Below, piece by piece: positions 1 through 64,000 of a DNA stretch of 64,000 nucleotides (positions are counted from its first letter, which is position 1; every line of letters begins with the position of its first letter). A program made the position numbers and the translations under genes. Below the pieces are notes generated by a model. That model searched no databases. It had not been told where the DNA came from and saw only the letters and a program-made list of their open reading frames with translations. The stretch lies in IMG/VR virus record IMGVR_UViG_3300005941_000003, positions 124,001 through 188,000 of that record, one strand, 5' to 3'.

Positions 1-367
1 AGTTTAGTTTAACTTTATGATCTGCAACTGACTTTGGATTTGCTTTTCTACCTGGTTCATCTGGTATATGCTCATAAGTCATTACACGAAATACAAGTTC
101 ATTTTCTTCAAATGAATCCGGATCTACCGCAAAATCTGCTTGTTTCTTTTTCTTATCTGTGTTTTCATCCCATGCTTCTTTTTGAAGTCGGGTTGCTCTA
201 TTTTTTCTTGCTTCTTCAATTGATGGTATAATGTCATCAACTGAATGTAGAATTATGTCATGTTGTGAGTGCAAGGTGCGATCTTCAAACCAAGAGAAAT
301 TTGATTTGGATGTGTGTATTTGCTTCAACATGTCTTTGTTGTTCAAATAATTTTGTCCACGGGCCAT
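1..367 (-). CDS. Late-transcription sigma factor, T4 gp55-like (5' part only; runs off the left edge; not in the ORF track)
   Basis: My translation from ATG at 367 is MARGQNYLNNKDMLKQIHTSKSNFSWFEDR...KANPKSVADHKVKLN, open to the window edge. NYLNNKDML matches the gp55 N-terminal signature (NYVNNKELL in T4). A GGAG SD lies upstream. Confidence 0.75.
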   Translation of the reverse strand, partial: MARGQNYLNNKDMLKQIHTSKSNFSWFEDRTLHSQHDIILHSVDDIIPSIEEARKNRATRLQKEAWDENTDKKKKQADFAVDPDSFEENELVFRVMTYEHIPDEPGRKANPKSVADHKVKLN

Positions 368-8141: not shown

Positions 8142-8167
8142 AATGGTAATCTCCTATATGATAGTTT

Positions 8168-8196: not shown

Positions 8197-8220
8197 CTAA
8201 AACTTCGTAGTTTATACGAT

Positions 8221-8228
8221 GATAAATA
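8221..8228 (+). promoter_or_regulatory. T4-type late promoter (GATAAATA)
   Basis: About 30 nt upstream of the gp25-like start; same ATGATAAATA as at 454 and 21684. Confidence 0.7.
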
Positions 8229-8257
8229 CTCTTAACGTAAAAAAGCGAGACCTATAA

Positions 8258-21685: not shown

Positions 21686-21693
21686 GATAAATA
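21686..21693 (+). promoter_or_regulatory. T4-type late promoter (GATAAATA)
   Basis: Intergenic, upstream of the GGAG SD and ATG 21724. Confidence 0.7.
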
Positions 21694-34509: not shown

Positions 34510-35361
34510 ATGGAAGAATGGCGTAAAAATATAGGAGCGGATGATGAATATTTTTTAAATTCATGTCCGGTTGACACTTATGATAACCCAAATTTGGGAT
34601 CGGAAAATAGAAGTATACGTGTTCGCTGGTATCCATCCGATAGCAAAGACAACTATATAGAATCTGGAAATGCATATACAATCGATAGTGTAGATTATGA
34701 TTTAAATAAACATGGGTTTCGGTGTGACGAGTTCGATGACATACGTGATAGTAAAAATAAAAAACTGATTGTGTTCGGATGCAGTAATACTTTTGGTATA
34801 GGCTTACCTGAACATCATATTTGGCCATATGAAGTAAAAAGATTACTTGAAAAAAAATACAACGAGAAGATCGATTTAATAAATCTTGCTATGCCAGGTA
34901 CTGGTTCGGACGATACAGTGCGCGTAATTAGTATGTTGGGTGACAGCTTTCATCCTAATTTTGTATGCTGCTTTACCCCACCTGTGTTTAGAAAAACTTA
35001 TACTGACCATAGCGGTAAGATATTTAATTATTTGCTATCTAATCAATATAACAAAAATTATCATGACTCGGATTGGAAACGAGTAAATTCTATCGGAGAA
35101 GCAATGGTGGATATATCTCCGCAATCTTTTTATTACGGTCAATATGTTGCAGAAAGTTTAGTTCGCACCTATGCAAAATTAAATAATGCCACCCATAAAA
35201 TAATAACAACTGCACATTACTTGGATGATATGATTGCTACATATGACATAGATAAAAATGAAGGCCCATGGAAATCTAAAGCAAGAGATTCTATGCACTA
35301 CGGTAGACACTTTCATAAGATGTTGGCAATTAAATTTATAGAAGGTTTGTTTAATGAGTGA
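34510..35361 (+). CDS. SGNH/GDSL-like hydrolase or acyltransferase (#1)
   Basis: NKHGFR, VFGCSNTFG, INLAMPG and DSMHYG (DxxH) motifs. Confidence 0.7.
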   Translation: MEEWRKNIGADDEYFLNSCPVDTYDNPNLGSENRSIRVRWYPSDSKDNYIESGNAYTIDSVDYDLNKHGFRCDEFDDIRDSKNKKLIVFGCSNTFGIGLPEHHIWPYEVKRLLEKKYNEKIDLINLAMPGTGSDDTVRVISMLGDSFHPNFVCCFTPPVFRKTYTDHSGKIFNYLLSNQYNKNYHDSDWKRVNSIGEAMVDISPQSFYYGQYVAESLVRTYAKLNNATHKIITTAHYLDDMIATYDIDKNEGPWKSKARDSMHYGRHFHKMLAIKFIEGLFNE

Positions 35362-36598
35362 TACATTTTGCGTTTTACCATGGTTGCATTTAGCATCGCA
35401 CCCGCATGGGGGTATAACATTATGTTGCAATGCAAATCATGAATATGGTGTTTCTAGGTCTAGGAACAAAACATCAAACTCTAATAACAACCCTCGCAGC
35501 ACTGATGGTGATCAATTCCTTGATTTAAAAAATCAGAGCATACAAGAAATAATGAACGGTGATACCTTTAAAGAAGTTAGACTGCAAATGCTAGAGGGTA
35601 AAAAACCATACGCATGTTTACGTTGCTACAAAGAAGAATCTATTGGTATTGTAAGCAAGCGTGTGAAAGAAAACAGAGAATATCCACATTTTACAATTGA
35701 ACAGGCAAAATCATTAACTGCACCAGACGGTACGATTGCCAATATAAATTTAGAATTTGTTGAACTTAGACTAGGTAACATTTGTAATGTTAAATGTAGA
35801 ACTTGCAACCCATGGAGTAGTTCAAAATGGATATCAGACTATCAAAAGTTAAGAGAAGAATATCCTGATCTGGGAGAATTCAATAAAGATCACAACCAGT
35901 TTGATTGGCCAGAACAAGAGAAATTTTGGGAAGATTTGTTTGAGCATACAAAAGATGCAAAGGTATTTTACATCAATGGCGGTGAACCTACGTTGATTAA
36001 AGAACACTTCAAGTTCTTGCAACGGATGATCGATGCCGGTAGAACTAACGTATGTCTACGTTATAACATTAATATGACAAACATGAATGAAGAAATCATA
36101 GAAATATGGAAACAGTTTGATGACATAGATATAGGTTTCAGCATCGATGATCTTAGTGACAGAAACGAATATATTAGAAATCCAACTAAATGGGAAGATG
36201 TTATGTCAACTGTTGATATGTTACTTCCACACAGATGTGATATACAATTCAGCATAACACAAACTGTTAGTTGGATGAACTTCCCATATCTTGGTGAGTT
36301 CTATGAATGGGCAAGTGGCCTAGGTATATATGTACACCATAATATGGTTAACGATCCGAAAATATTCTCTCCTAATGTACTACCGTTAGAATATCGTAAA
36401 GATGTAATAAAAAGACTGTCAAACATATTACCTAATGACAAAATAAATGCATTAAGGCAGTTTGAACAAAACGAAACGGATATAGAACTTTTACGCAGAG
36501 CAATAAACTACACCGATTCTTTAGACAGAATGCGCAGAGAAAAGTTCGATGTGGTGTTTCCAGAATTATCGTTTTTGAGAAAATTATATGAAAAATGA
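35354..36598 (+). CDS. Radical SAM protein with N-terminal Twitch-type domain (#4)
   Basis: FCVLPW...LCC...CLRC; CNVKCRTC; NGGEPT. Confidence 0.92.
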   Translation: MSDTFCVLPWLHLASHPHGGITLCCNANHEYGVSRSRNKTSNSNNNPRSTDGDQFLDLKNQSIQEIMNGDTFKEVRLQMLEGKKPYACLRCYKEESIGIVSKRVKENREYPHFTIEQAKSLTAPDGTIANINLEFVELRLGNICNVKCRTCNPWSSSKWISDYQKLREEYPDLGEFNKDHNQFDWPEQEKFWEDLFEHTKDAKVFYINGGEPTLIKEHFKFLQRMIDAGRTNVCLRYNINMTNMNEEIIEIWKQFDDIDIGFSIDDLSDRNEYIRNPTKWEDVMSTVDMLLPHRCDIQFSITQTVSWMNFPYLGEFYEWASGLGIYVHHNMVNDPKIFSPNVLPLEYRKDVIKRLSNILPNDKINALRQFEQNETDIELLRRAINYTDSLDRMRREKFDVVFPELSFLRKLYEK

Positions 36599-43750: not shown

Positions 43751-44637
43751 AAATACTTGTTACAGGCGCAGCGGGATTTATAGGCAATGCGATAGCAAAA
43801 GAACTTAAAGGATCGGACCATGAAGTTATTTTAACTGATATACTCATGCCAGATGAATTACATGGTCATGCTTATACATACGCAGATTTAACAAATCAAG
43901 ATGCAGTTAATAACTTACCGGATGTTGACGTTGTATATCACATGTGTGCATATAATAATACGGCACACTTCTATTCTAAACCAATGAGTGTCATTGATTC
44001 TACGCTTACCCCTACAATATACTTACTGCAACGTTATAAGTCAATAAAAAAATTCATATACGCAAGTAGCAGTGAGATATATGCAGGTGCTATACAACTC
44101 GGTATATCCGATATACCAACACCAGAAGTAAATGTAGGGATAATTAATGGCATTGACAACCCACGTTGGAGTTATGCAGGTAGTAAACTCATGGGAGAAA
44201 TACTAGTACACGCCGCGCACGTCGAGCATGGGCTAAATTATGCAATCATTCGTTATCACAACGTATACGGTAAACGCCAGAAAGCACACTTTATACCAGA
44301 GTATGCAGAGCGTATACAAAACGATGACCGCACATTATACGGCGCGGATCAAACACGTGCATTCTTGTACATAGATGATGCTGCGAAATTGACAGCCATG
44401 GTTGCAGACGTATTAGAAAATGATACTATACATATTGGTAACCCAAAAGAGATTACTATAAAACTGGTGGCGGCGATGATACGTGATATTCTTTTAGTAC
44501 ATACCAAACCAGAATACAAAGATGCACCTGAAGGTAGTGTAGATAGAAGATGTGCAGATATTTCTAAACTATTAGAACTATTCCCAGATTTTAAATTCAC
44601 AGGGCTAGATGCGGGTCTTAGAAAAACTCTGCTATAA
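43747..44637 (+). CDS. NAD-dependent epimerase/dehydratase (extended SDR)
   Basis: VTGAAGFIG, ASSSEIY, YAGSK (YxxxK) and RYHNVYG motifs. Confidence 0.9.
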   Translation: MKILVTGAAGFIGNAIAKELKGSDHEVILTDILMPDELHGHAYTYADLTNQDAVNNLPDVDVVYHMCAYNNTAHFYSKPMSVIDSTLTPTIYLLQRYKSIKKFIYASSSEIYAGAIQLGISDIPTPEVNVGIINGIDNPRWSYAGSKLMGEILVHAAHVEHGLNYAIIRYHNVYGKRQKAHFIPEYAERIQNDDRTLYGADQTRAFLYIDDAAKLTAMVADVLENDTIHIGNPKEITIKLVAAMIRDILLVHTKPEYKDAPEGSVDRRCADISKLLELFPDFKFTGLDAGLRKTLL

Positions 44638-44640
44638 ATA
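44633..44640 (+). promoter_or_regulatory. Late promoter TATAAATA, 5 nt before ATG 44646 (leaderless)
   Basis: TATAAATA-cgaac-ATG; no SD. Confidence 0.7.
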
Positions 44641-44645
44641 CGAAC

Positions 44646-45773
44646 ATGAAATGCCCACTAGTTACCAATCATCTAGAAATAAACTCAAGCGGCGAATTCA
44701 AACCGTGTTGTATTAGTTCGAAGCGATTTGCTATTGACAATAAGATAGCAAATGCAGATACCCATACCATAGATGATATAATACAACACAGTGATCGTAA
44801 CGAGTGGATTAAAAATTTTGATGCAAACTATGAAACTGATTGTAGACAATGCTATGAAGTAGAACGTAGTGGTGGTGAAAGTAAGCGCATCAGAGAACTT
44901 AGAGATTGGCGAACTAACTATCATTTCAAATCTGATACATTGCAATCTCTTGATTTGAAGATGGGTAATACCTGTAATCTCGCTTGTGCAATATGCGCAC
45001 CAGATAGCAGCAGTAAATGGGCATCAATATACAAACAACTTGGTTACGATACTGGTATACGACTACAACGTTGGCCAGAACGTGATGAATTTTGGGAACA
45101 ACTCAACCAACACGCCCAAAACATACAAAAGATAGAACTTGCTGGCGGCGAACCGTTTATGATTAAGAAGCAAGAAATACTAATCAACTTCTTAATAGAA
45201 CGAGACTTAGCAAAGAATATAGATATAACTTGGTTTACAAACTGTACTATATGGCCAGAGAATATTGTGAAGCACTTTGATAAGTTCAAACAAGTTCGTA
45301 TAATGCTTAGTATCGACAATACGGGTGAACAATTCGAATACATACGATACCCTGCAAAATGGAATGAAGCATATGATATATTCTTGAAGTTCAAGGAGTT
45401 ACATAGTCGCAAGATAGTAAATCTAGGCATATCACATTCTATAGGATTACTAAATGTATGGAGATTACCAGAGTTTCACGCGTGGTGCAGACAGCACGAA
45501 GTATCTGTATTCAACAATCTTATAATGAATCCACTAAGTGCAAAAGACTTACCGAAAGAGTTTAAATTGCGAGTAGCAGAAAAGTTGAGTAAGTGTAGCG
45601 ACCCCTCATACCAACATAACCCAGTTGTTGGAGAAAACAATTGGCTCATACAGTTTATGATGGGAGACAGTGATAACAATCTACAGCATCTCACTGAAAA
45701 AGTTATACCATCTCGTCCGACGATAGATATATATGAGGCGTTTCCTGAATTGAAAGGAATGTTAAATGTATGA
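44646..45773 (+). CDS. Radical SAM protein with N-terminal Twitch-type domain (#5)
   Basis: KCPL...PCC...CRQC; CNLACAIC; AGGEPF. Confidence 0.92.
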   Translation: MKCPLVTNHLEINSSGEFKPCCISSKRFAIDNKIANADTHTIDDIIQHSDRNEWIKNFDANYETDCRQCYEVERSGGESKRIRELRDWRTNYHFKSDTLQSLDLKMGNTCNLACAICAPDSSSKWASIYKQLGYDTGIRLQRWPERDEFWEQLNQHAQNIQKIELAGGEPFMIKKQEILINFLIERDLAKNIDITWFTNCTIWPENIVKHFDKFKQVRIMLSIDNTGEQFEYIRYPAKWNEAYDIFLKFKELHSRKIVNLGISHSIGLLNVWRLPEFHAWCRQHEVSVFNNLIMNPLSAKDLPKEFKLRVAEKLSKCSDPSYQHNPVVGENNWLIQFMMGDSDNNLQHLTEKVIPSRPTIDIYEAFPELKGMLNV

Positions 45774-46560
45774 TACTCTTTGGCTAGGTTGTTCACATAG
45801 TTCTGGTAGTTATTGTAAAGATACTGGAGAACTTATAGACCAATCTCATAGTATTCCATCCGTTCTTGCGACAAAACTAAATCAACGTTGGAAAAGCATT
45901 TCATTTCCAGGTGATGGGGTGATGAAATATGCAGAAGCAGTGAAGTTGCTTGATGAAAACAAGTTATTATCCAATTTTAGAAATATAATCATACAGCGCA
46001 CTTATGAGCCTCGTATGACGTTTTTTAATGATAGCGATTATATTTACGATAGAATACTAGAATACGTAAACGACCCAAATCGATTTGAAACTATTATATC
46101 AGTAAGACCACCAACCGAACGTACTTTTTCTCTTTTCGCACATCAGAACTACGATCAGTATCATTCTAAATTTGCAGGTAAAGAAATAGAATTAATAGAT
46201 ATGTTTGAAAATATATCTCACAGTGTTGATCCCAGAGAAAGCACCACAGAGACTACACAGTATCCAAGTCTTTGGGTTGATGTGCATTATGATTATATAA
46301 AATATACTGCGGATAAAAACAATTGCAAATTGTATATGTTTGATTACGTGGGCAGTTTTAGAAACCAAAATCGTAGATGGAAAATTAACAAACCATTTAA
46401 ACGCACACTTATTAATGGTGATCAAGATTTTGTTTTCCACCATCTTACAGAACAAAATAGATTAGATTTGTTAGCGTCTGCACAGCACCCTACACACGGT
46501 GCAGTTGATTTGCTGGTAGACATATTATATAAAGAGTTGAATGATGAAGAATATAAATGA
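45766..46560 (+). CDS. SGNH-like protein (#3)
   Basis: WLGCSHSSG, SFPGDG and C-terminal AQHPT motifs. Confidence 0.55.
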   Translation: MYDTLWLGCSHSSGSYCKDTGELIDQSHSIPSVLATKLNQRWKSISFPGDGVMKYAEAVKLLDENKLLSNFRNIIIQRTYEPRMTFFNDSDYIYDRILEYVNDPNRFETIISVRPPTERTFSLFAHQNYDQYHSKFAGKEIELIDMFENISHSVDPRESTTETTQYPSLWVDVHYDYIKYTADKNNCKLYMFDYVGSFRNQNRRWKINKPFKRTLINGDQDFVFHHLTEQNRLDLLASAQHPTHGAVDLLVDILYKELNDEEYK

Positions 46561-47734
46561 CGCGTTTTGTATTGCACCATGGATGCATATGCATGTGGAA
46601 CCAGATGGTGAAGTGCAACTATGCTGTGCATCAAACTGGAAACACGAACATCAGCGCAGTCTCGGCAATCTAAACGAAAGCAGCCCAGAAGAAATCTGGA
46701 ATAACTCACAGTATCGTATGGTGCGTAAGAATATGCTAGAGGGTCGTAAGATGCCTCAGTATTGCTCACCTTGTTATGATCGTGAAGCAGGTGCTATTAA
46801 CCAAACAGAGAGACAGCGTTTCAATCGCGAGTTTGCAAATACATTTGATTTAGTTCCTACTACACTGAGTGACGGTACACTAGATACACTAAAGCTAAAG
46901 TATCTAGACATTCGATTTAACAATCTATGTAATCTAAAGTGTCGTACATGTGGTCCTGATTGGAGTACAAGCTGGGCAAACGAAATGGGTATTGAGAAGC
47001 CACTACTATACAACAACACGTGGCGTAAGTTACTACCGTATCTAGATCAATTAGAGAAAGTATACTTTGCTGGCGGTGAACCACTTATGACCCCAGAACA
47101 CTACGATTTCTTAGAACAACTTGTCGAGATTAACCCAAACATTGAATTGTTATACACATCAAACTTTAGTAGACTATCGCTAAAGAACCGTCATGTGTTA
47201 GATTACTGGCCTAAGTTTAAACTTGTAAGTGCTATTGCTAGTATAGATCATTACGGTGAACATGCAGCATATGTTCGCACAGGCAGTGACTATAATACGA
47301 TAGTAAAAAATATAAAAGAGTTACAGAACGCCGGGCATCGCAACATTCAACCAGCAGTAACAAGTGTGTATTCTATATACAATGCAACCCGTCTCGGTGA
47401 TTTCGTTATTCGACTATTCGAAGACGGTGTTATACAAACTATGGATCAGATTGTATTCAACATACTGGTTAACCCAGATTATCAAATGGCAACAATTATA
47501 CCAGAAAGTGCGCTAGAATTTGCTATAGCTAACACACAAAAAGGTATAGATTATCTGATATCACATGGGCACAACCCACAGAAATTACAGAGCGCAATAG
47601 ACTGGTTGACATCAAATTGGAACTATGATAAGATCAAATTCAACAAGTTTGTAGAATACAATCTAGACTTAGATACTAAGCGCGGCACTGACTTCTATAC
47701 TATGTATCCAGAGTTCGGCGAGTGTAGGGATTAG
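46541..47734 (+). CDS. Radical SAM protein with N-terminal Twitch-type domain (#6)
   Basis: FCIAPW...LCC...CSPC; CNLKCRTC; AGGEPL. Confidence 0.92.
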   Translation: MMKNINDAFCIAPWMHMHVEPDGEVQLCCASNWKHEHQRSLGNLNESSPEEIWNNSQYRMVRKNMLEGRKMPQYCSPCYDREAGAINQTERQRFNREFANTFDLVPTTLSDGTLDTLKLKYLDIRFNNLCNLKCRTCGPDWSTSWANEMGIEKPLLYNNTWRKLLPYLDQLEKVYFAGGEPLMTPEHYDFLEQLVEINPNIELLYTSNFSRLSLKNRHVLDYWPKFKLVSAIASIDHYGEHAAYVRTGSDYNTIVKNIKELQNAGHRNIQPAVTSVYSIYNATRLGDFVIRLFEDGVIQTMDQIVFNILVNPDYQMATIIPESALEFAIANTQKGIDYLISHGHNPQKLQSAIDWLTSNWNYDKIKFNKFVEYNLDLDTKRGTDFYTMYPEFGECRD

Positions 47735-47803
47735 CGCCGCGCGGGGCGAAGTTCGAGCGGCACCAAGATAATCCCGGAACAAGCCATCGGAGATGGCTTG
47801 GTT
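47735..47803. other. GC-rich intergenic element with hairpins
   Basis: gccgc/gcggc (47736-47761) and the perfect caagccatc-gga-gatggcttg hairpin (47780-47800), followed by aaaatttttt. Confidence 0.6.
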
Positions 47804-47823
47804 AGGAAAATTTTTTGGAGCAT

Positions 47824-47843
47824 TAAGTGCGCACTTATAAATA
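47824..47843 (+). promoter_or_regulatory. 14-bp palindrome overlapping a late promoter TATAAATA that lies 5 nt before ATG 47849
   Basis: taagtgcgcactta (47824-37); TATAAATA (47836-43)-tatct-ATG. Confidence 0.7.
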
Positions 47844-47848
47844 TATCT

Positions 47849-49108
47849 ATGGAACCTAAAGCAAACAATTCATTCTGTTACTATCCTTTCACCGCACTTG
47901 CCGTAAAACGTTGGGTACAGGGTAAGTTTTCACCTTTTCCATGCTGTAATTCTGGACATTTACTTAATGCAGAATGGGAATCAAATTTTCCCAAAAATGC
48001 TACCCTAGATGCTGCATTTCATTCAAAACCTATGAATGATCTTAGACAAGATATGTTAGCTAATCGTAAGCCTGATATATGTGGAGTATGTTGGCGTAGA
48101 GAGAAACATTATGGAAGTTCTCCAAGATTGCATAGCGCACATATACTTAAAGGTAACACCATTGACATACACAATCCTCAACTACAAGTGTTAGATATTG
48201 GTACTGGAAATACCTGCAATTTAAGATGTAGAATGTGTACTCCATTTTCATCTAGTGAGTTGATGAAAGATAGAGACCAATTTGTAGAACGTAATGTAAA
48301 GTATTGGAGAAGTTTTCCATATACTGACGAAATCTTAAAGAGTGAATCCATCAATAAGTTTGACAAAAACAATGAAGATTGGACCAGTATATTTGACACC
48401 ATTGAAAACTACACTTATATAAAAGCTAGTGGTGGAGAAACATTACTATCAAATCAGTTCATAGACTTCCTACAAAAATGTATAGATGAAGATCATGCCC
48501 AGAACATAATACTTCAAATTACTACAAATGCTACACAGTTGACGAAACCAAACATAGAGAGATTAAAGAAGTTCAAAGGGTTAGAGTTCATATTCTCTAT
48601 AGATGGGATAGACAAGATATATGAATACATTAGATATCCACAATCGTTTGATAAGTTAGAACGCAGTATAGATAAATTCTTTGATAACGGATTGATAAAA
48701 GGAACGCTAGACATAAACTATACACTCACAGTATATAATGTTCATGACATAGAAAACACGATAGACTGGGTTTACAAGTTGAGTAAGCGTTATGATACAT
48801 TCATAAACTTTACAATAAGCAATGTGTTTCAAACAACACCCTTTGACATAAGTGGACTAACACCAGAGATACTACAACCTATATACGATAGAGTTGTAGA
48901 CTTAGAGGGTTACTATAGGGAACAGATTAATCTGAATACAGTAGAGGGCATCAATCATATAGCACGATGTATAGAACAGGGTGTAGATACCAAGATGAGG
49001 GATAAGTTTATATACTTAACACATGAGTTCGATAAGAACAGGGATCAATGCTATTCAGACTATGTACATCCCATACTAGCGGCGTATATAGAGGCGAATA
49101 CGGTATAG
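47849..49108 (+). CDS. Radical SAM protein with N-terminal Twitch-type domain (#7)
   Basis: FCYYPF...PCC...CGVC; CNLRCRMC; SGGETL; FSIDG. Start moved from TTG 47798 to ATG 47849. Confidence 0.9.
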   Translation: MEPKANNSFCYYPFTALAVKRWVQGKFSPFPCCNSGHLLNAEWESNFPKNATLDAAFHSKPMNDLRQDMLANRKPDICGVCWRREKHYGSSPRLHSAHILKGNTIDIHNPQLQVLDIGTGNTCNLRCRMCTPFSSSELMKDRDQFVERNVKYWRSFPYTDEILKSESINKFDKNNEDWTSIFDTIENYTYIKASGGETLLSNQFIDFLQKCIDEDHAQNIILQITTNATQLTKPNIERLKKFKGLEFIFSIDGIDKIYEYIRYPQSFDKLERSIDKFFDNGLIKGTLDINYTLTVYNVHDIENTIDWVYKLSKRYDTFINFTISNVFQTTPFDISGLTPEILQPIYDRVVDLEGYYREQINLNTVEGINHIARCIEQGVDTKMRDKFIYLTHEFDKNRDQCYSDYVHPILAAYIEANTV

Positions 49109-49235: not shown

Positions 49236-50441
49236 ATGAAAGATTCTGAAAATTTTTGTATACTACCATGGGTTCATATGCATATATGGCCTAACGGTAC
49301 TACCTATCCTTGCTGTTTAGCTACGAATGACTACGTGATAGGGGATACGAATACACACTCTATGCTAGAGATATGGAATAGTCCTAAGCAACGTATGCTA
49401 CGCAAGAACATAATGAGTGGTAAGCCTACGAGTGGGTGTACACGTTGTTATGAACACGAAGCTAATGGTATACGTAGTATGAGACAGAATATGAATAATG
49501 ACTATGCACATCATTATGATAGAGTAGACTTAACATACCCAGATGGTAGCTTAGATGATATACATATGGCTTATCTAGATATACGCTTCTCTAATATATG
49601 TAACATGCGTTGTCGTACATGTGGCCCTGAACTATCCAGTGGATGGGTAGATGATGCTGTAAAGACTGGTAGATATCGTGCAGATCAACCTAAGATATTA
49701 AAGATAAAGCCTACACTAGCAGAATTCTGGGAGGATGTAGAACCATGGATAGGCAGTGTAGAACGTATATACTTTGCTGGTGGTGAGCCGCTGATTATGG
49801 ATGAACACTATAAGATCCTAGAGCATTTGATTTCGATAGGTAAAACAGATATACCTATAGCATACAATACTAACTTTTCTCGCTTGACATACAAGAGCCA
49901 TGATGTTATAGAGTTATGGCGGCAGTTTAGTGATATTACAGTAGGTGCCTCACTAGATGCTAAAGGTAATCGCGCTGAGTATATGCGTAAGGGTACAGTA
50001 TGGGCTGACATCTGTGCTAACCGTGAACGTATGATACGTGAAGTCCCACATGTAAAGTTTATGATTAGTTCGACAGTAAGTGCTTATAATGTGATGACTA
50101 TAACTGAATTTTGGGATGATTGGATTACACGTGGATGGGTTGATCCTCTACAGATAGATGTGAATATGTTGCTATTCCCTGAACATCATCGTTTACAAGT
50201 GCTGCCAGAAGGTTTGCGTAACATTGCTAAAGATCGTATTGGGGAATATATCGAGCGGTGGGGTATACTAGAACGTGATGATAATGGTAGAACTAGTAGT
50301 GGATTACTTGGGTTAGTACGTGCGTTAGATGGTAGTGAAAAGGGTTGGTTTAAGTTCTGTCATAAGAATGTAGCGTTAGATGCTATACGCGGTGAGAGTT
50401 TCTATACTGTATTCCCAGAGTTCATGCCCTATGCGCTTTAG
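49236..50441 (+). CDS. Radical SAM protein with N-terminal Twitch-type domain (#8)
   Basis: FCILPW...PCC...CTRC; CNMRCRTC; AGGEPL. Confidence 0.92.
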   Translation: MKDSENFCILPWVHMHIWPNGTTYPCCLATNDYVIGDTNTHSMLEIWNSPKQRMLRKNIMSGKPTSGCTRCYEHEANGIRSMRQNMNNDYAHHYDRVDLTYPDGSLDDIHMAYLDIRFSNICNMRCRTCGPELSSGWVDDAVKTGRYRADQPKILKIKPTLAEFWEDVEPWIGSVERIYFAGGEPLIMDEHYKILEHLISIGKTDIPIAYNTNFSRLTYKSHDVIELWRQFSDITVGASLDAKGNRAEYMRKGTVWADICANRERMIREVPHVKFMISSTVSAYNVMTITEFWDDWITRGWVDPLQIDVNMLLFPEHHRLQVLPEGLRNIAKDRIGEYIERWGILERDDNGRTSSGLLGLVRALDGSEKGWFKFCHKNVALDAIRGESFYTVFPEFMPYAL

Positions 50442-51340
50442 TAAAGTTGTACACCGCGATTGTTTAACACAAGACGTTCCCAACCTTGATTAACCCATAC
50501 ATTTTGATTGTAGTCTAGTATTTCTTCTACAGTCATATCAGGGGTACATCCATCACGATATATAGCGGAGTGTAGTGTAAACTGCCCATGTTGTGGTGGT
50601 AACGGTTTACACTTTAAACCATGTACTACAACATCATGTAATGTTTCTTCGAACAATGAATCGTCTATGCGTGGTGTGCTGAAACGTTTTAACATCTGAT
50701 CTAAGTAATGATCCCCTATCATAGGGAATGCCCAAGATGCAGTAGCGTAACGCGCAACAAACCATGTATCATTCACAGCGGTGTTTTCAAATACACCATT
50801 GAAGTAAATTTGCCTACGGTTGATATGGCCAAATGGGTCTACATTCTTTCTAGTATGAAACTCGGGTACTAGATCGTAACGCCATTTAACGACATGACTA
50901 TAACTTGTACCAGTACTGGTTGCATACTCTAACATAGCTTTACTTGCGTGACTTACGGAGTATGCTTGTGAGAGATAACCGATACCCATAAGGTCACGGT
51001 TTTTACCCCAATTATTATAATGAGTTTCGTACAAATCTATTAACTCATGATATGAAGTTACAGTTGAGTATCTAGGTTGTAGTACACTTACATCAGTTAG
51101 TGGTACAGGTTTAATGCGTTCCCGTAACCAATTTGATGGTATATTGCCGGTCTTTAAGTTTGATCTGATTGATGCCCATTCTTCGTTATCATCTATTACG
51201 ATATCATCAGCGGTTTGATGACAAAAGAAATCCACATCATATCCACTGTTGCCCAACCCCTTGAATTGTTCTACAATACGAGGTGCGGTGTCAGCAATCG
51301 TGCGAGTTCTACCAGTCATTAATACAGCAATCTTTTTCAT
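50438..51340 (-). CDS. Glycosyltransferase-like protein (K-IAV...WRYDL family, #1)
   Basis: MKKIAVLMTG..R, VDFFCH, VVKWRYDL and VNDTWF motifs; paralog of 53112-54050. Start moved from 51376 to 51340. Confidence 0.55.
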   Translation of the reverse strand: MKKIAVLMTGRTRTIADTAPRIVEQFKGLGNSGYDVDFFCHQTADDIVIDDNEEWASIRSNLKTGNIPSNWLRERIKPVPLTDVSVLQPRYSTVTSYHELIDLYETHYNNWGKNRDLMGIGYLSQAYSVSHASKAMLEYATSTGTSYSHVVKWRYDLVPEFHTRKNVDPFGHINRRQIYFNGVFENTAVNDTWFVARYATASWAFPMIGDHYLDQMLKRFSTPRIDDSLFEETLHDVVVHGLKCKPLPPQHGQFTLHSAIYRDGCTPDMTVEEILDYNQNVWVNQGWERLVLNNRGVQLY

Positions 51341-51345
51341 ATATG

Positions 51346-51361
51346 TATTTAGTACTAAATA
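51346..51361. promoter_or_regulatory. Perfect 16-bp palindrome forming a bidirectional late promoter (CTAAATA on both strands)
   Basis: tatttagtactaaata; ATG 5 nt away on the minus strand (51340) and 6 nt away on the plus strand (51368). Confidence 0.75.
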
Positions 51362-51367
51362 TGGATA

Positions 51368-52078
51368 ATGATACATGAATTTAAGACTGGACGCAGTGGT
51401 TCTACAGTTGCATTAATCGCATATGGGAACGGTACTGCTATACACAAAACTAATGTACGGAATGCTGAGAAGGTGGTAGAGTTGATGCGTAACTCACCGC
51501 TACCAACACCAGTGGTATATGAATATACTGATAGTTCTATTACACTAGAGTATATACCTGGTATCCCTATGCGTAAGCACATCTATACTATGAACAAGAG
51601 TGAACTAGACCGTACTGTTGGGATATTGCGTGACTATATAAGTGATTGTCTCGCAAAGTCTACTCCCTATGATTATAGTGCTGAGATTGCTGCTAAAGAG
51701 TCGAGTACCGGATACCAGGCGCGAATCACCAATCCAGTCTTCCCCAAATACAATATACACGGTGATTTGACAATTGACAACCTTTTATGTTATGAAGGTA
51801 AAATATATTTCATAGACTATAACTATACTGAATTAGATTCCATATACTTTGATGTAAATAAACTACGACAAGACTTAGATGGGCTGTGGTTCGCACGTAA
51901 TCATACCCCCAATGTAACTGTTAAGATGAACTTAAACTATATCAAGCGACATCTAGACTGTGCATTTCCGGGAATGTTCCGTGATGATCTTTACAGATTT
52001 CAGTTAAGTCGTATACTCCCCTATGTGAGTGGAGCAGAACATGAGTTCATAATGAGAGAAATAAAACGATGCGAGTAA
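51368..52078 (+). CDS. APH/choline-kinase-like phosphotransferase
   Basis: GRSGS, LEYIPG, IHGDLTIDNLL, YFIDY and D..KLRQDL motifs. Confidence 0.8.
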   Translation: MIHEFKTGRSGSTVALIAYGNGTAIHKTNVRNAEKVVELMRNSPLPTPVVYEYTDSSITLEYIPGIPMRKHIYTMNKSELDRTVGILRDYISDCLAKSTPYDYSAEIAAKESSTGYQARITNPVFPKYNIHGDLTIDNLLCYEGKIYFIDYNYTELDSIYFDVNKLRQDLDGLWFARNHTPNVTVKMNLNYIKRHLDCAFPGMFRDDLYRFQLSRILPYVSGAEHEFIMREIKRCE

Positions 52079-53115
52079 TTGTGCCATGCGCTGGACGCAG
52101 TAGTAGATTCCCTAATACTAGACCTAAATATTTGTTAACAATGCCAGACGGAGAATTGATGCTACAACATGTAGTACGCAATTGGATAGAAGATTATCCG
52201 GTAACTGTTGTAATAAATCGTGAACACGAAGAACAGTATCGTGTAATAGATATTATAGAAAGAATATGGGGGAAACTAGTAAGTGTGCATATAGTTGAAC
52301 ACTATACTAATGGTCCTGCTGAAACTATATATGAGACTGTTAAAGCGTGGGATGACACACCGTTCTATGTGCAGGACTGTGATAGTTTGTTTAATATTAA
52401 ACTACCTGCCGTTAATCGTAACTTTGTAGCGCACGTAGACCTAAATGATTATCCTACTCTAACTAACATTGCTGCTAAGAGTTTTGTTACACTACACGAA
52501 GAACTGCTTTCAAACATTGTAGAGAAGCGATTGATTAGTGACAACGTATGTGTGGGAGGTTATGGGTTTCATAGTTCATATGGGTATAGACATCACTATG
52601 AACTGTTAGTAGAACGTCAAGGTAAAGATTCTGAACTATTCATATCACATGTTATCAAAACAATGATGGAAAACGGTTGCATATTCGGTGGGGTTCGTGC
52701 TATAAACTACTTAGATTGTGGTACATACGAATCATTTATAGAGAATCAGAAACGTCATGCCACTATATTCTGTGACCTTGATGGAGTAGTATTCTATAAT
52801 CAATCACGATACTTTGAGAACAACTATTCTATAGAACCTAAACTAAAGCCACAGGCAGTGTCATTCTTATTGGGTAAGCAAGAGAACGGTGCGCATATAG
52901 TGTTCACTACCGCCAGACCTAGTGGCGCTGCTGGCATAACTGAGGCTGCATTAGGTGCGGCCGGGTTTAAAGATTATAGAATACTATACGATCTACCACA
53001 TGCCCCACGTATGTTAATCAATGATGTGAGTGCATCTAACCCATGGCCTAGTGCTATAGCTATTAACTCACCACGTGATGATGACGATTACTGGAAAGCT
53101 GTACAAGAACGTTAA
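52069..53115 (+). CDS. Nucleotidyltransferase (GT-A / NTP_transferase) fused to a C-terminal HAD phosphatase
   Basis: IVPCAGRSSRF...PKYLL, GPAET, QDCD and DCGT; then FCDLDGV, FTTARP and LIND. Confidence 0.8.
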   Translation: MRVIVPCAGRSSRFPNTRPKYLLTMPDGELMLQHVVRNWIEDYPVTVVINREHEEQYRVIDIIERIWGKLVSVHIVEHYTNGPAETIYETVKAWDDTPFYVQDCDSLFNIKLPAVNRNFVAHVDLNDYPTLTNIAAKSFVTLHEELLSNIVEKRLISDNVCVGGYGFHSSYGYRHHYELLVERQGKDSELFISHVIKTMMENGCIFGGVRAINYLDCGTYESFIENQKRHATIFCDLDGVVFYNQSRYFENNYSIEPKLKPQAVSFLLGKQENGAHIVFTTARPSGAAGITEAALGAAGFKDYRILYDLPHAPRMLINDVSASNPWPSAIAINSPRDDDDYWKAVQER

Positions 53116-54050
53116 CCACCATAGCCTTCATTAGATATACTATGATCTGGTGGTATGTCTTGTCTAAACAGTCGCAAGTATTCATCTAGTTCGCCATCAT
53201 TTAGTTCAAAGAAATCACCCCGCACACTGACATTGGGTCTTACAAAGTTATCTGAAATTAAACCAGCAATTTTGTCGCATTCTGTGACTAATCTATGCAA
53301 ATTGTTTTGTGCGATGTACTGTAGAAATGCTGCTTCTAAGTATATACCGCGACTATCGCCTGTACGAGTTGCAGCATATACATCGGTATGAACAGTCTTG
53401 AATAACGGTATTGCAGATGAATTAAATCCAAACCAACGATCATTATTACCATCAATTAGTAATCCACCTATCTGATATGGTATATCACAGAGTATTGCAG
53501 GTGGTGAAGTCTTTTTAAAGAAGAACTGTTGTGCCTTTGCGATAAATGATGTTGGGGTATCTTGTAAATGTTCTACAACTAAATCTGCGAATGCTTTATA
53601 GTTAATCAACAGATCATAACGCCATCTGACTATCATATCGTAATTTGCAAGATCATATTCATGTAGTACACGTTGTAATCCCCAAAACTGTGCAGTTAAG
53701 TTTACATAAGGTATGAAATGATCGCGGTCTTCGTCAAATCCTTCTGCGCTATGCATATCACTAAACGAACTGCGAACTATACCTTTAGTATAAGGCCTTA
53801 GCGCAGTTACGGTGCGCTCTTGTAATTCTGGTGATTCGTCTGGTAAATGCTCTGTTAACGACAGAGACTTGAATACTGTACCACCATCCCAAACCCTAGG
53901 GAATTTACTATGATCATTCCACAAATGCAAGTAATAATCAACCGCCACGCCACGTCTACGCAATTCATCAAACGCTCCATACAGTGCATCATAGTTCTCA
54001 CTACGTGCATTACACAGTCCAACAAATACTACAGCTATACGTTTCTTCAT
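53112..54050 (-). CDS. Glycosyltransferase-like protein (K-IAV...WRYDL family, #2)
   Basis: MKKRIAVVFVG, VDYYLHLW, YDMIVRWRYDL and NNDRWF motifs. Confidence 0.55.
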   Translation of the reverse strand: MKKRIAVVFVGLCNARSENYDALYGAFDELRRRGVAVDYYLHLWNDHSKFPRVWDGGTVFKSLSLTEHLPDESPELQERTVTALRPYTKGIVRSSFSDMHSAEGFDEDRDHFIPYVNLTAQFWGLQRVLHEYDLANYDMIVRWRYDLLINYKAFADLVVEHLQDTPTSFIAKAQQFFFKKTSPPAILCDIPYQIGGLLIDGNNDRWFGFNSSAIPLFKTVHTDVYAATRTGDSRGIYLEAAFLQYIAQNNLHRLVTECDKIAGLISDNFVRPNVSVRGDFFELNDGELDEYLRLFRQDIPPDHSISNEGYGG

Positions 54051-54055
54051 AATAA

Positions 54056-54067
54056 TATTTATAAATA
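54056..54067. promoter_or_regulatory. Perfect 12-bp palindrome forming overlapping bidirectional TATAAATA late promoters
   Basis: tatttataaata; ATG exactly 5 nt downstream on both strands (54050 minus, 54073 plus). Confidence 0.8.
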
Positions 54068-54072
54068 TGGTT

Positions 54073-54981
54073 ATGATCGAATATGCTTATATAGAAACCA
54101 CCAATCACTGTAACCTACAATGCTCATTCTGCAATAGACATGAGGTTATAGGGCCACTACAACACATGCCATTACAACGGTTTACAAGATTAATGGAAAG
54201 GCTTAAGGATCATCCTATACATACAGCCAAACTAATGGGTATGGGGGAACCATTCATGCATCCACAATTCGATAAGATTACTAGTACATTTAAGGAATAC
54301 TTTCCCGAATCATTCTTAATCTCCGCTACTAACTGTCAATATACCCTATCACAAGCACCATGGTTCGTCAACTCCCTAAAGCATATTGATATGTTATATC
54401 TATCTATAGATGGGTATCAAGAAACATATGAACGATTCCGTCCACCAAGCAAGTGGAATAAACTAATAAAGTTCTTAGATGAATTATCTACAGTAGATAG
54501 ACACAATTGTCGTATAGTGGTTAATTATGTAGTAAATCCAGGCAATGTAGATGATATTGAACCAGTATATCATGACATCGTATTAAAATATAATCTAGCT
54601 GAATTACGTCTTAACATAGCACAAGACTGGAGTCAAGATAAAAACATGACGGGCGGGTATACCCCAGAACAACTAGAATATCTAAAAGGTTGGGATTCCG
54701 CTATACAGGGTAAAAGTGAATGGGATTATGATCAATGCTTCTGGGTAAAGAACGGTTTATACACTACTGTAGAGGGTAGAGTTCTAGCATGTTGTATGAA
54801 TACTGGTGCGAAAGAATTTGGGAATATATTTTCGGATACTATAGAGAATATTCATGGTGATCTAGAATTCATGAGAGTTAAACATGGGTGTGCCACTAAT
54901 AAGCCAACTGAACACTGTGCTAACTGTTCATATAAAGAATTGGTCCCTATACTGAAAGAACTGGGTATCCATCGTGCCTAA
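54073..54981 (+). CDS. Radical SAM protein with C-terminal SPASM/Twitch domain (#9, conventional architecture)
   Basis: IETTNHCNLQCSFC, GMGEPFMH, LSIDG and C-terminal C.W...ACC...G...C..C. Start moved from 54067 to 54073. Confidence 0.9.
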   Translation: MIEYAYIETTNHCNLQCSFCNRHEVIGPLQHMPLQRFTRLMERLKDHPIHTAKLMGMGEPFMHPQFDKITSTFKEYFPESFLISATNCQYTLSQAPWFVNSLKHIDMLYLSIDGYQETYERFRPPSKWNKLIKFLDELSTVDRHNCRIVVNYVVNPGNVDDIEPVYHDIVLKYNLAELRLNIAQDWSQDKNMTGGYTPEQLEYLKGWDSAIQGKSEWDYDQCFWVKNGLYTTVEGRVLACCMNTGAKEFGNIFSDTIENIHGDLEFMRVKHGCATNKPTEHCANCSYKELVPILKELGIHRA

Positions 54982-62865: not shown

Positions 62866-63060
62866 ATCGAATGCTACCTTGACAACATTGCCATCTGGAT
62901 CGAACATAGTGCTTACACGACCTTTGCATTTGCTGCTAGTCCGGCAACGCCACCAACTGTCAGCTTGGTCCTGAGTGTCAACAAATACAGAACTCCACTC
63001 AAGAACCCCACTTGGGTTCTCGGCATTTAGACGATTGTATTGTGCGCGGAGTTCCCACAT
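62863..63060 (-). CDS. Small early hypothetical protein
   Basis: GAGAG SD; flanked by promoter cassettes. Confidence 0.65.
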   Translation of the reverse strand: MWELRAQYNRLNAENPSGVLEWSSVFVDTQDQADSWWRCRTSSKCKGRVSTMFDPDGNVVKVAFD

Positions 63061-63065
63061 GTTTA

Positions 63066-63118
63066 ACTCTCTCTTGATTACAAGACAGTTATATAGTGAT
63101 TCGTTTTAACTGTCAACT
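63066..63118 (-). promoter_or_regulatory. Repeated early promoter/5'UTR cassette, copy 3
   Basis: TTGACA (63116-11), TGATTCG (63097-63103), CTATATAAC -10 region and gtaatcaagagagag leader. Confidence 0.7.
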
Positions 63119-63258
63119 ATTAAAATGGTGGATCTTCTGGTACTTTATCTTCCAACTTTCCACTCATAATGTCCCACACACGTTGCTTTTCCATATGTTC
63201 AACATAATGAGAGCGACGACCGTCCTTGATATATGAACATTCGTGCGATTGTCAAGTA

Positions 63259-63266
63259 GATAAATA
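63259..63266 (+). promoter_or_regulatory. Late promoter GATAAATA
   Basis: Upstream of the AGGAG SD and ATG 63292. Confidence 0.65.
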
Positions 63267-63291
63267 AAGTTAGAAGTTAATAGGAGTTACT

Positions 63292-64000
63292 ATGTTATAC
63301 GCAAATGGATGCAGTTTTACATACGGTACAGGTCTTGCACTAAAAGATAAAGCATGGCCTTTTGAACTAGCAGAGTTGTTAGGTTTCGATAGAACAGAAA
63401 CAGTCACGGAAGCACAACGAGGCGTGTCAAATCAATACATTGTACGCAATACGATCACGACAGTTAGTGAACTTATACAGAATGGTAAGAAGCCATTTGT
63501 TGCTATTGGGCTAACTGCACCCAGTAGACGCGAACATTTTATAAAGGAAAAGAATATTCTAATTCACAATATTCCTGCACATGAGTATCATGGTAACATT
63601 ATGTTAGATGAACAAACAAACAGAGATTTAGATTTGTTTAACACTCTATACATGAAACATTTCTGGTCACCAGTTTATGACTTTCATACATACTTGATGC
63701 ATGTGGTACAGATACAAAACTTCTGCAAACAGAATGATCTAGAGTATGTTATATTCAATAGTTTGAACTTGACTCCAAATCTTCTTGAACCTACTAAGTT
63801 TACAGAACTTTGTGAGCAAGCGGACATGGGTCCGGTACTTGCACAATTAGATATGACACATATATATGAACAGCAGACATTCTTTACATACATGCACGAC
63901 AACGAACTGTTCTTTGACCAAGAAGGCGATGAACGATACATGCATCCAAATGAACAAGCACACAGTGAGTGGGCAAAGATCATATTCGATGATATCGAAA
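63292..64000 (+). CDS. SGNH-like protein (#5; runs off the right edge; not in the ORF track)
   Basis: My translation is MLYANGCSFTYGTG...AWP...AQRGVSNQYI...GLTAPSRRE...YMHPNEQAHSEWAKII, open to the edge; AGGAG SD. Confidence 0.8.
   Translation, partial: MLYANGCSFTYGTGLALKDKAWPFELAELLGFDRTETVTEAQRGVSNQYIVRNTITTVSELIQNGKKPFVAIGLTAPSRREHFIKEKNILIHNIPAHEYHGNIMLDEQTNRDLDLFNTLYMKHFWSPVYDFHTYLMHVVQIQNFCKQNDLEYVIFNSLNLTPNLLEPTKFTELCEQADMGPVLAQLDMTHIYEQQTFFTYMHDNELFFDQEGDERYMHPNEQAHSEWAKIIFDDIE

What the first reader, a model, noticed from the sequence alone, without database searches (positions are those of the whole stretch)
50438..54981. Two perfect palindromes act as back-to-back late promoters, each with a paralogous GT-like gene on its left
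Seen: tatttagtactaaata (51346-61) and tatttataaata (54056-67) fill most of the 27- and 22-nt gaps between divergent ATGs. In both cases the leftward gene is a K-IAV...WRYDL paralog whose stop overlaps the convergent gene's stop by 4 nt. Inference: an ultra-compact bidirectional promoter, possible because the late element is a single short box, which lets genes insert in inverted orientation. The arrangement arose twice or by cassette duplication.
Basis: partly seen in the sequence, partly recalled or inferred. Interest (0 to 1): 0.68.

Follow-up and report, generated by a model that had tools for sequence, protein, structure and literature searches.

The report
Back-to-back leaderless phage late promoters
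In an uncultured marine jumbo phage, two tiny gaps between oppositely oriented genes each hold two head-to-head late-promoter boxes 5-6 bases from the start codons, most likely a two-way promoter making leaderless messages; T4 has the same two-way box, so this is a compact variant of a known design.

Summary
TATTTAGTACTAAATA (51346-51361) and TATTTATAAATA (54056-54067) lie between divergent ATGs. The leftward genes are distant paralogs (23% identity) with a GT-A glycosyltransferase fold. The window belongs to a marine metagenomic jumbo phage related to Atu_ph07 and RaK2-type phages, and it encodes a gp55-family late sigma factor. Its genome-wide upstream motif is (tGA)TAAATA(c).

TAAATA-N5-ATG occurs 15 times in the genome, against 1-5 for other spacings. 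Twelve of these ATGs open long ORFs, and none has a Shine-Dalgarno sequence. Three of the four starts at the palindromes are N5 and one is N6.

In relatives the half-sites drift apart (spacers 0, 1, 2, 4, 5, 12 nt) while box-to-ATG spacing holds. This means two independent boxes, each tied to its own gene; the palindromy is incidental.

CAT-N5-TATTTATAAATA-N5-ATG occurs in at least 119 IMG/VR contigs, 106 with ORFs on both sides. An N3 control gave 17 contigs and 1 such case. Pelagiphage HTVC008M has the same design at its gp2/gp4 genes.

T4 carries TATTTATAAATA between divergent late genes 26 and 51, but with Shine-Dalgarno leaders. The two-way late promoter is therefore known; the double-leaderless form appears undescribed. 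No RNA data exist, so initiation is inferred, not shown.

The parts
50438..51340 (-). GT1: 300-aa GT-A-like protein (MKKIAV...WRYDL). It is the inverted gene and is predicted to be leaderless.
   Evidence: ORF and start read. Orthologs at 62-89% identity start at the same Met. Paralog of GT2.
51346..51361 (.). Palindrome 1. Two abutting late-promoter boxes, ACTAAATA on each strand (minus-strand box 51346-51353, plus-strand box 51354-51361).
   Evidence: In relatives the spacer between the TATTTA and TAAATA half-sites varies (4, 2, 1, 0 nt) while the flanks are kept.
51368..52078 (+). Kinase-like gene (236 aa, weak APH/RIO-type hits). The box is 6 nt upstream of the ATG.
   Evidence: The L024 ortholog is 36% identical.
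52069..53115 (+). NTP-transferase-domain gene (348 aa). It converges on GT2 with a 4-nt overlap (TTAA).
53112..54050 (-). GT2: 312-aa GT-A-fold protein (MKKRIAV...WRYDL). It is the inverted gene and is predicted to be leaderless.
   Evidence: AF2 model with pLDDT 89.6. GT-A matches. TAAATA-N5-ATG.
54056..54067 (.). Palindrome 2. Two TATAAATA boxes overlapping by 4 nt (minus-strand box 54056-54063, plus-strand box 54060-54067).
   Evidence: Conserved in L019-L023. The same 12-mer lies between T4 genes 26 and 51.
54073..54981 (+). Radical SAM/SPASM gene (302 aa from MIEYAY). The box is 5 nt upstream. The alternative ATG at 54067 is not conserved.
49236..50441 (+). SPASM-radical SAM gene (401 aa). 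It converges on GT1 with a 4-nt overlap (TTAG).
44635..44648 (+). Another TAAATA-N5-ATG site, at the start of a 375-aa SPASM-rSAM gene.
47838..47851 (+). Another TAAATA-N5-ATG site, at the start of a 419-aa rSAM gene. It follows a conserved GC-rich spacer with a hairpin.
1..367 (-). 5' part of the gp55-family late sigma factor gene. The whole gene is G000:C1:123573-124367.
   Evidence: phrog_12791 at E 1.7e-81. T4 gp55 matches it at E 2.3e-4.

Best explanation
Each gap holds two oppositely oriented copies of the phage's gp55-type late-promoter box (consensus tGATAAATAc, a relative of T4 TATAAATA). The copies abut at site 1 and overlap by 4 nt at site 2. This promoter type needs only one short -10-like box and no -35 element, so two boxes fit back to back in 12-16 bp.

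Each box lies 5 nt (6 nt for the kinase gene) upstream of its own ATG. Host RNA polymerase carrying the phage sigma would therefore start at or next to the A of the ATG and make leaderless mRNAs in both directions. One polymerase can occupy the site at a time.

The arrangement lets a single inverted gene sit inside a long plus-strand sugar-biosynthesis cluster with no intergenic overhead, and it restarts plus-strand expression just after the inverted gene. The perfect palindromy is a by-product of juxtaposing two boxes, not a functional unit.

Shown: the sequences, spacing statistics, conservation, the sigma gene and the protein fold. Inferred: initiation at these sites, late timing and leaderless translation.
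For: - A gp55-family sigma is encoded at the window's left edge.
- ATAAATA is enriched 27-fold in the 40 nt upstream of ORF starts: 32 of 64 genomic copies lie there. It precedes the tail sheath and virion-protein genes with GGAG-containing leaders of 20-36 nt.
- No conserved -35-like positions appear upstream of the box.
- TAAATA-N5-ATG occurs 15 times, against 1-5 for spacings 0-15. Twelve of the 15 open ORFs of at least 60 codons. Seven of those 12 have no alternative upstream start, and none has room for a Shine-Dalgarno sequence.
- Only ATG is enriched at N5. GTG gives 1 site and TTG 4, with no long ORFs.
- The 342-kb version of this phage has 12 ATAAATA-N5-ATG sites and 0 at N3.
- In relatives at 92% to 34% identity the half-site spacer is 0, 1, 2, 4, 5 or 12 nt, while TAAATA-N5-ATG is kept for GT1 and GT2. 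Even co-directional GT2-clade homologs keep N5.
106 of 119 have ORFs of at least 60 codons on both sides, and the 102 sites with complete ORFs on both sides fall into 21 distinct gene-pair types. The N3/N3 control gave 17 contigs, 1 with ORFs on both sides.
- With the seeded site masked, other TATAAATA-Nx-ATG sites in those loci peak at N5 (45 sites, 40 opening long ORFs).
- 11 of 17 larger such contigs encode a gp55-family protein.
- HTVC008M has CAT-N5-TATTTA-N4-TAAATA-N5-ATG at the annotated starts of its gp2-like and gp4-like late genes.
- T4 has TATTTATAAATA between late genes 26 and 51.
- The T4 late box lies about one helical turn upstream of the start site (PMC2988020).
- Symmetric bidirectional promoters in E. 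coli commonly have start sites 18, 10 or 23 bp apart (PMC12825309). The ATG-to-ATG distance at site 2 is 23 bp.
Against: - There are no transcript data. All 24 public runs that hold the sequence are DNA metagenomes.
- Site 1 uses CTAAATA, which has a C where 36 of 54 boxes have an A, so it may be weak.
- The kinase gene is N6, and N7 in L024, so a 1-2 nt leader or a shifted start site has to be assumed.
- Cultured clade relatives (Atu_ph07, Serratia BF, Vibrio 2.275.O, Phosso) and cyanophages show no N5 enrichment. T4 has only one TATAAATA-N5-ATG. Leaderless late genes are therefore not a general T4-superfamily habit.
- No terminators separate the convergent genes. Read-through from upstream promoters could therefore also transcribe the plus-strand genes.
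Confidence: 0.7

Rival explanations
1. The palindromes are operators for a dimeric DNA-binding regulator, a repressor or activator that controls both divergent genes, rather than promoters.
For: Both are perfect inverted repeats located exactly between divergent starts.
Against: - Half-site spacing varies from 0 to 12 nt among relatives, while each half-site keeps its distance to its own ATG. A dimeric protein would need fixed half-site spacing.
- The half-site is the same box found singly upstream of about 50 other genes.
- These are the only two such palindromes in 246 kb, so a dedicated regulator would have only two sites.
Confidence: 0.05
2. The boxes next to the ATGs are not active promoters. 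The genes are transcribed by read-through from distant promoters, or as antisense for the inverted genes, and TAAATA-N5-ATG acts as an AU-rich translation-initiation context that replaces a Shine-Dalgarno sequence. Alternatively, only one direction fires.
For: No terminators lie between the convergent genes, so plus-strand read-through is plausible. Site 1 has a weaker box variant. There are no RNA data.
Against: - The inverted GT genes have no other upstream promoter on the minus strand. The next minus-strand sequence upstream is the coding region of a plus-strand gene.
- The same motif, with the same flanks, acts at variable distances of 18-45 nt upstream of genes that do have Shine-Dalgarno leaders. 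That is promoter-like, not ribosome-site-like.
- The sharp N5 peak with an ATG-only preference is the classic leaderless signature.
- gp55 co-occurs with the pattern in other contigs.
Confidence: 0.15
3. Chance AT-rich palindromes in short AT-rich gaps, with no function.
For: The genome is AT-rich (61% A+T). In 4 of 100 shuffles of the window, two matches appear somewhere.
Against: - Both sites fall in the two tightest divergent gaps with N5/N6 spacing on all four sides.
- The half-sites are conserved down to 34-38% protein identity.
- The N3 control gives 7-fold fewer hits and almost none flanked by ORFs.
Confidence: 0.02
4. The palindromes form DNA cruciforms or RNA hairpins that act structurally, for example as terminators or processing sites.
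For: They are inverted repeats.
Against: Predicted stability is negligible: -1.4 and -2.1 kcal/mol, z -0.27 and -0.91 against shuffles. The stems are AT-only. The sites lie at gene starts, not gene ends. Changes in spacer length among relatives are not compensatory in any structural sense.
Confidence: 0.02

Closest known systems
Phage T4 genes 26/51 divergent late promoters
   Same: The identical 12-mer TATTTATAAATA (T4 116450-116461) lies between divergent late baseplate genes, giving TATAAATA in both directions. From my own memory, and not found in the held library: Scarlato et al. 1989, Virology 171:475, described overlapping late promoters directing divergent transcription of this cluster.
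   Different: In T4 both genes have 17-21 nt leaders with an AAGGAG Shine-Dalgarno sequence. Here the ATGs lie 5-6 nt from the boxes with no Shine-Dalgarno sequence, which predicts leaderless mRNAs. T4 has only one TATAAATA-N5-ATG in its genome.
Symmetry-based bidirectional promoters of bacteria (Warman et al. 2021; PMC12825309)
   Same: A short pseudo-symmetric -10-type element drives divergent transcription. Common start-site spacings are 18, 10 and 23 bp. The ATG-to-ATG distance at site 2 is 23 bp.
   Different: Those are sigma-70 promoters, many of which produce non-coding or leadered RNAs. Here the box is a phage gp55-type late element and both products are predicted leaderless mRNAs for real genes.
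Leaderless mRNAs with a -10 box at a fixed distance from the ATG (lambda cI; Actinobacteria; 5'-terminal AUG recognition, Brock et al. 2008 as cited in PMC5312081)
   Same: There is a fixed short distance between the -10-like box and the ATG, no Shine-Dalgarno sequence, and an ATG-only preference.
   Different: To my knowledge, and in the library searches, this has not been described for gp55-type late promoters. Here it also occurs on both strands of one element.
Pelagibacter phage HTVC008M gp2-like/gp4-like intergenic site
   Same: CAT-gttac-TATTTA-tatc-TAAATA-aggat-ATG at the annotated starts. This is the same architecture as site 1, with a 4-nt spacer and N5 on both sides. Genome-wide it has 14 N5 sites against 2 at N3.
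   Different: A different phage family (Kyanoviridae-like T4 relative), and the genes are structural rather than sugar-pathway genes. It is also untested experimentally.
Predicted ATAAATA late promoters of RaK2/GAP32/CBB-type jumbo phages (PMC5259590)
   Same: Same broad clade by DNA polymerase. These phages have a gp55-like sigma and an ATAAATA motif upstream of structural genes.
   Different: The cultured members tested here show no N5 enrichment.
GT-A fold glycosyltransferases / Pfam DUF7796
   Same: The GT2 model matches GlcAT-S/P, WrtF, Mnn9, GtrB, BoGT6a and SpsA at Z 10-11 over 170-220 residues, with Foldseek probability 1.0. 8 of 64 family members hit DUF7796.
   Different: No Pfam glycosyltransferase family is matched. 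Identity to solved structures is 6-14%. The family is very small, 87 representatives among 1.84 billion. Donor and acceptor are unknown.

Membership tests
T4-type (gp55-dependent) late promoter | A TATAAATA-like box is the only conserved element, with no -35 element | tested here: met
   Site 2 is TATAAATA on both strands and site 1 is ACTAAATA. The genome consensus is tGATAAATAc, with under 0.3 bit of information at the positions further upstream, u14-u4.
T4-type (gp55-dependent) late promoter | The phage encodes a gp55-family sigma factor | tested here: met
   phrog_12791 at E 1.7e-81, G000:123573-124367. T4 gp55 matches it at E 2.3e-4.
T4-type (gp55-dependent) late promoter | The box precedes late (virion) genes | tested here: met
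   Boxes lie upstream of the tail sheath gene (genome 82176 to 82139) and of a virion structural protein gene (window 458).
T4-type (gp55-dependent) late promoter | Transcription starts about 6 nt downstream of the box, late in infection, and depends on gp55 (plus gp33 and gp45) | not testable with these tools
   No RNA runs hold the sequence and the phage is uncultured. gp33 and gp45 homologs were not searched for.
Bidirectional promoter (shared or overlapping -10 symmetry) | Opposed -10-type elements overlap or abut within one short symmetric sequence | tested here: met
   The 8-mers overlap by 4 nt at site 2 and abut at site 1.
Bidirectional promoter (shared or overlapping -10 symmetry) | Divergent start sites on both strands | not testable with these tools
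   No RNA data. The only support is the conserved box-to-ATG spacing on both sides.
Leaderless mRNA genes | The promoter box lies at a fixed short distance from the start codon, genome-wide | tested here: met
   N5 has 15 sites against 1-5 for other spacings, and 12 of the 15 open long ORFs. The same peak appears in other contigs.
Leaderless mRNA genes | No Shine-Dalgarno sequence, and the start codon is AUG | tested here: met
   The 5-nt spacers contain no GGAG. GTG and TTG are not enriched at N5.
Leaderless mRNA genes | The mRNA 5' end coincides with the AUG and is translated | not testable with these tools
   This needs 5'-end mapping and toeprinting or proteomics.
GT-A fold glycosyltransferase | Rossmann-like alpha/beta/alpha nucleotide-sugar-binding fold | tested here: met
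   AF2 model with pLDDT 89.6 and pTM 0.91. Z 10-11 to many GT-A enzymes. Foldseek E 3e-6 and above.
GT-A fold glycosyltransferase | DxD-type metal/nucleotide-binding motif and a catalytic base | tested here: inconclusive
   R144, D146 (in WRYDL) and D204 are invariant across 64 members. They were not mapped onto a ligand-bound template.
GT-A fold glycosyltransferase | Sequence membership in a curated glycosyltransferase family | tested here: not met
   There is no Pfam hit for either protein. Only DUF7796 is hit, by 8 of 64 relatives. Both proteins hit phrog_13607, of unknown function, weakly.

The most novel reading that the evidence does not exclude
A large, mostly uncultured set of gp55-encoding marine phages, including this jumbo phage and the pelagiphage HTVC008M, expresses many late genes as leaderless mRNAs from a TATAAATA-N5-ATG module. 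The 22-28 bp double module (CAT-N5-box/box-N5-ATG) would then be a portable, self-sufficient two-way expression unit. It would let single genes be inserted or swapped in inverted orientation inside operon-like clusters with no intergenic cost. Replacement of the inverted partner gene in L024 supports this.
Probability: 0.5. Interest if true: 0.6.

Novelty: new variant of a known kind. Interest (0 to 1): 0.45.

Why it matters
- **Annotation.** The N5 rule gives exact start codons and promoter calls for T4-superfamily phages in metagenomes. Gene callers disagreed here between the 54067 and 54073 starts.
- **Host translation.** It predicts that these phages rely on leaderless translation late in infection, which says something about the translation apparatus of their marine hosts.
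- **Function of the sugar cluster.** It places a roughly 37-kb sugar and radical-SAM cluster under late promoters. That points to a late function such as modification of virions or of the cell surface.
- **Engineering.** A 22-bp element that expresses two genes divergently with no untranslated region is about the smallest bidirectional expression unit imaginable, and it can be tested with T4 components.
- **Limit on the claim.** It is not a new principle. T4 already has the same palindrome at genes 26 and 51.

Tried and rejected
- **Cultured phage collection.** Megablast of the region and tblastn of both GT-like proteins found nothing.
- **IMG/VR protein-pattern scans.** These returned only the same phage.
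- **RNA evidence.** The run search returned 24 DNA metagenome runs and no RNA run. Read laying was therefore not used, because contigs cannot show start sites.
- **Structural-element idea.** Rejected: the hairpins are negligible and the window has no Rfam match.
- **First AF2 model.** The 8-sequence alignment gave pLDDT 58.7 and the model was discarded. The 64-sequence model was used instead.
- **Recent cassette duplication.** Rejected on the family tree. This was a quick IQ-TREE run; the careful search did not finish.
- **N5 as a clade-wide habit.** Rejected for cultured RaK2/Atu_ph07-type phages and for the cyanophages Syn9, P-SSM2 and S-PM2.
- **Downstream initiator motif.** A position-specific look for one found only weak AT bias.
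- **Literature.** Searches for a prior description of leaderless gp55-type late genes or palindromic late promoters found nothing specific. The 1989 T4 paper and the T4 genome review are not held.

Full report
**What the window is.** The window is bases 124001-188000 of a 245,963-bp single contig with 38.7% GC. IMG/VR holds the same phage as a 342,181-bp contig whose ends overlap and which CheckV rates 92% complete. Twenty-four marine metagenome DNA runs hold the region and no RNA run does. The DNA polymerase is 41-49% identical to those of Sinorhizobium phage Phosso, Agrobacterium phage Atu_ph07, Vibrio phage 2.275.O, Yersinia fHe-Yen9-04 and Serratia BF. The phage is therefore an uncultured marine member of the RaK2/Atu_ph07-type, T4-related jumbo phages. 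PHROG hits include tail sheath, baseplate, tail fibre and ribonucleotide reductase. A gp55-family late sigma factor gene (phrog_12791, E 1.7e-81) spans the left edge of the window.

**Observation check.** TATTTAGTACTAAATA is at 51346-51361 and TATTTATAAATA at 54056-54067. The divergent ATGs are at 51340/51368 (27-nt gap) and 54050/54073 (22-nt gap). The leftward proteins of 300 and 312 aa carry K-IAV and WRYDL. The convergent ORFs overlap by 4 nt, TTAG and TTAA. The two proteins are only 23% identical. TATTTA-N0-6-TAAATA occurs nowhere else in the window or in the 246-kb contig.

**The box is the genome's main upstream motif.** ATAAATA is enriched 27-fold in the 40 nt upstream of ORF starts. 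The consensus is tGATAAATAc, with no conserved -35-like positions. Most boxes lie 18-45 nt upstream of a start, with a GGAG Shine-Dalgarno sequence in between. Examples include the tail sheath gene and a virion protein gene. The CBB paper predicted the same ATAAATA late motif and a gp55-like sigma for this clade (PMC5259590). Other divergent pairs in this genome use two separate boxes 30-40 nt apart, each with a Shine-Dalgarno leader.

**A second class: box-N5-ATG.**
- TAAATA-N5-ATG occurs 15 times, against 1-5 for every other spacing from 0 to 15. Twelve of the 15 ATGs open ORFs of at least 60 codons.
- The 5-nt spacers hold no Shine-Dalgarno sequence, and seven of the 12 have no alternative upstream start.
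- GTG and TTG are not enriched at N5.
- The T4 late box lies about one helical turn upstream of the start site (PMC2988020). A box ending 5 nt before the ATG therefore puts +1 on the A, which is the classic signature of leaderless mRNAs.
- Three of the four starts at the two palindromes are N5 and the kinase gene is N6.
- Five of the 12 long-ORF N5 genes lie within 44.6-54.1 kb of the window.

**Relatives show two independent half-sites.** Homologs of the GT-like proteins were found in metagenome contigs.
- At site 1 the sequence between the half-sites is GTAC here, GC in L019/L025-27, G in L023 and nothing in L024. The flanks TATCCA and CATAT, which set the distance to the ATGs, are kept.
- At site 2, L019-L023 keep TATTTATAAATA. 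L024 has two separate boxes, and L172/L173 have a 12-nt spacer. GT2 remains N5 in all of these.
- In L176/L177, whose GT gene (P0012) is a GT1-clade homolog, the half-sites are 5 nt apart and the GT gene has a 33-nt leader with AGGAG instead.
- Co-directional GT2-clade homologs (L171, L174) still carry TAAATA-N5-ATG.
- Variable half-site spacing with fixed box-to-ATG spacing argues against a dimeric-operator reading. It also makes the perfect palindromy incidental.

**The design is widespread.**
106 of them have ORFs of at least 60 codons on both sides. The 102 with complete ORFs fall into 21 distinct gene-pair types and 38 protein families.
- The N3/N3 control, with the same number of specified bases, gave 17 contigs, 1 with ORFs on both sides.
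- With the seeded site masked, other TATAAATA-Nx-ATG sites in those loci peak at N5 (45 sites, 40 opening long ORFs).
- 11 of 17 larger contigs encode a gp55-family protein.
- Among cultured phages, Pelagibacter phage HTVC008M has 14 N5 sites against 2 at N3. It has CAT-gttac-TATTTA-tatc-TAAATA-aggat-ATG at the annotated starts of its gp2-like and gp4-like genes.
- The cyanophages Syn9, P-SSM2 and S-PM2, and the cultured jumbo relatives, are not enriched.

**Precedent in T4.** T4 contains TATTTATAAATA once, at 116450-116461. It lies between divergent late baseplate genes 26 and 51, each with a 17-21 nt leader containing AAGGAG. I recall a 1989 Virology paper by Scarlato et al. on overlapping late promoters directing divergent transcription there. 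It is not in the held library, so this rests on memory. Symmetry-based bidirectional sigma-70 promoters are also established, with common start-site spacings of 18, 10 and 23 bp (PMC12825309). The two-way late promoter is therefore known in kind. What I did not find described is the double-leaderless form.

**The GT-like genes and their context.**
- Neither protein has a Pfam family.
- A profile search found only 87 relatives among 1.84 billion representatives, and 8 of 64 hit DUF7796.
- With a 64-sequence alignment the GT2 model reached pLDDT 89.6 and pTM 0.91. It matches GT-A glycosyltransferases at Z 10-11 and Foldseek probability 1.0. R144, D146 and D204 are invariant. 'GT-like' is therefore supported at the fold level only.
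- On a quick tree, GT1 and GT2 sit in opposite deep halves of the family, separated by a split with support 98. They are not a recent cassette duplication.
- In L024 the kinase ortholog (36% identity) keeps its position at a TATTTATAAATA site, but the inverted partner is an aminotransferase-like gene. This fits the idea that inverted genes can be swapped at such sites.
- The surrounding plus-strand cluster (about 21.7-59 kb) encodes C- and O-methyltransferases, two UDP-sugar dehydrogenases, an epimerase/dehydratase, an aminotransferase, an NTP-transferase and at least 9 radical SAM proteins.

**Mechanism and limits.** The best reading (confidence about 0.7) is two opposed gp55-type boxes, each starting a leaderless mRNA at its own ATG. 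The plus-strand box also restarts the cluster after each inverted gene. No terminator separates the convergent genes, so antisense overlap has to be tolerated. This point is unexplained. Initiation, timing and leaderless translation are all inferences. The phage is uncultured and no RNA data exist.

Noticed in passing
window 44646-45773, 46541-47734, 49236-50441, 33083-34501, 35354-36598: At least five radical SAM proteins have the SPASM domain at the N-terminus, before the radical SAM core. This is the reverse of the usual order. The rSAM at 54073 has the usual order.
   Followed up: no
window 21700-59200: A plus-strand cluster of about 37 kb mixes sugar-nucleotide enzymes with at least 9 radical SAM proteins and many ORFs that have no family. 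The enzymes include C-methyltransferase, TylF-like O-methyltransferase, two UDP-sugar dehydrogenases, an epimerase/dehydratase, an aminotransferase, an NTP-transferase and a kinase-like protein. It appears to be driven by late-type boxes at 21688, 44635, 47838, 51356, 54062 and 56692.
   Followed up: partly
window 47735-47848: This is the only sizeable intergenic gap in the cluster. It is GC-rich and nearly identical in relatives L025 and L027. It contains an AAGCCATC-GGAG-GATGGCTT hairpin followed by a T-run, just before the TAAATA-N5-ATG of the 419-aa rSAM gene. It has no Rfam match.
   Followed up: partly
window 63060-63292; genome 60287-60325 and 213868-213929: A conserved motif of about 30 nt (tgattaca..actgttataNNgtgattcgt) recurs next to the start of the leftward gene in three divergent gaps. 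It may be an early- or middle-promoter or an operator element, distinct from the late box.
   Followed up: no
window 8141-8258: A divergent gap holds two separate TAAATA boxes about 33 nt apart. The leftward box overlaps a sigma-70-like TTGACA-N17-TATAGT, so that box may belong to an early promoter.
   Followed up: no
whole contig (G000) versus IMGVR_UViG_3300027757_000397: The 246-kb contig is incomplete (CheckV 67%). A 342-kb version exists whose ends overlap inside the GT1 gene, which implies a circular or terminally redundant map.
   Followed up: partly
window 12929-21667: A single ORF of 2,912 aa follows one of 1,435 aa (8619-12926), downstream of the lysozyme/baseplate-hub-like genes. 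These are presumably giant virion or fibre proteins and were not examined.
   Followed up: no
L024:2587-2612 and L176:3198-3253: In distant relatives the gene leftward of the double box sits N7 (L024 kinase) or N4 (L172 and L176) from its box instead of N5/N6. The box-to-ATG distance on that side is therefore less strict than on the GT side.
   Followed up: partly
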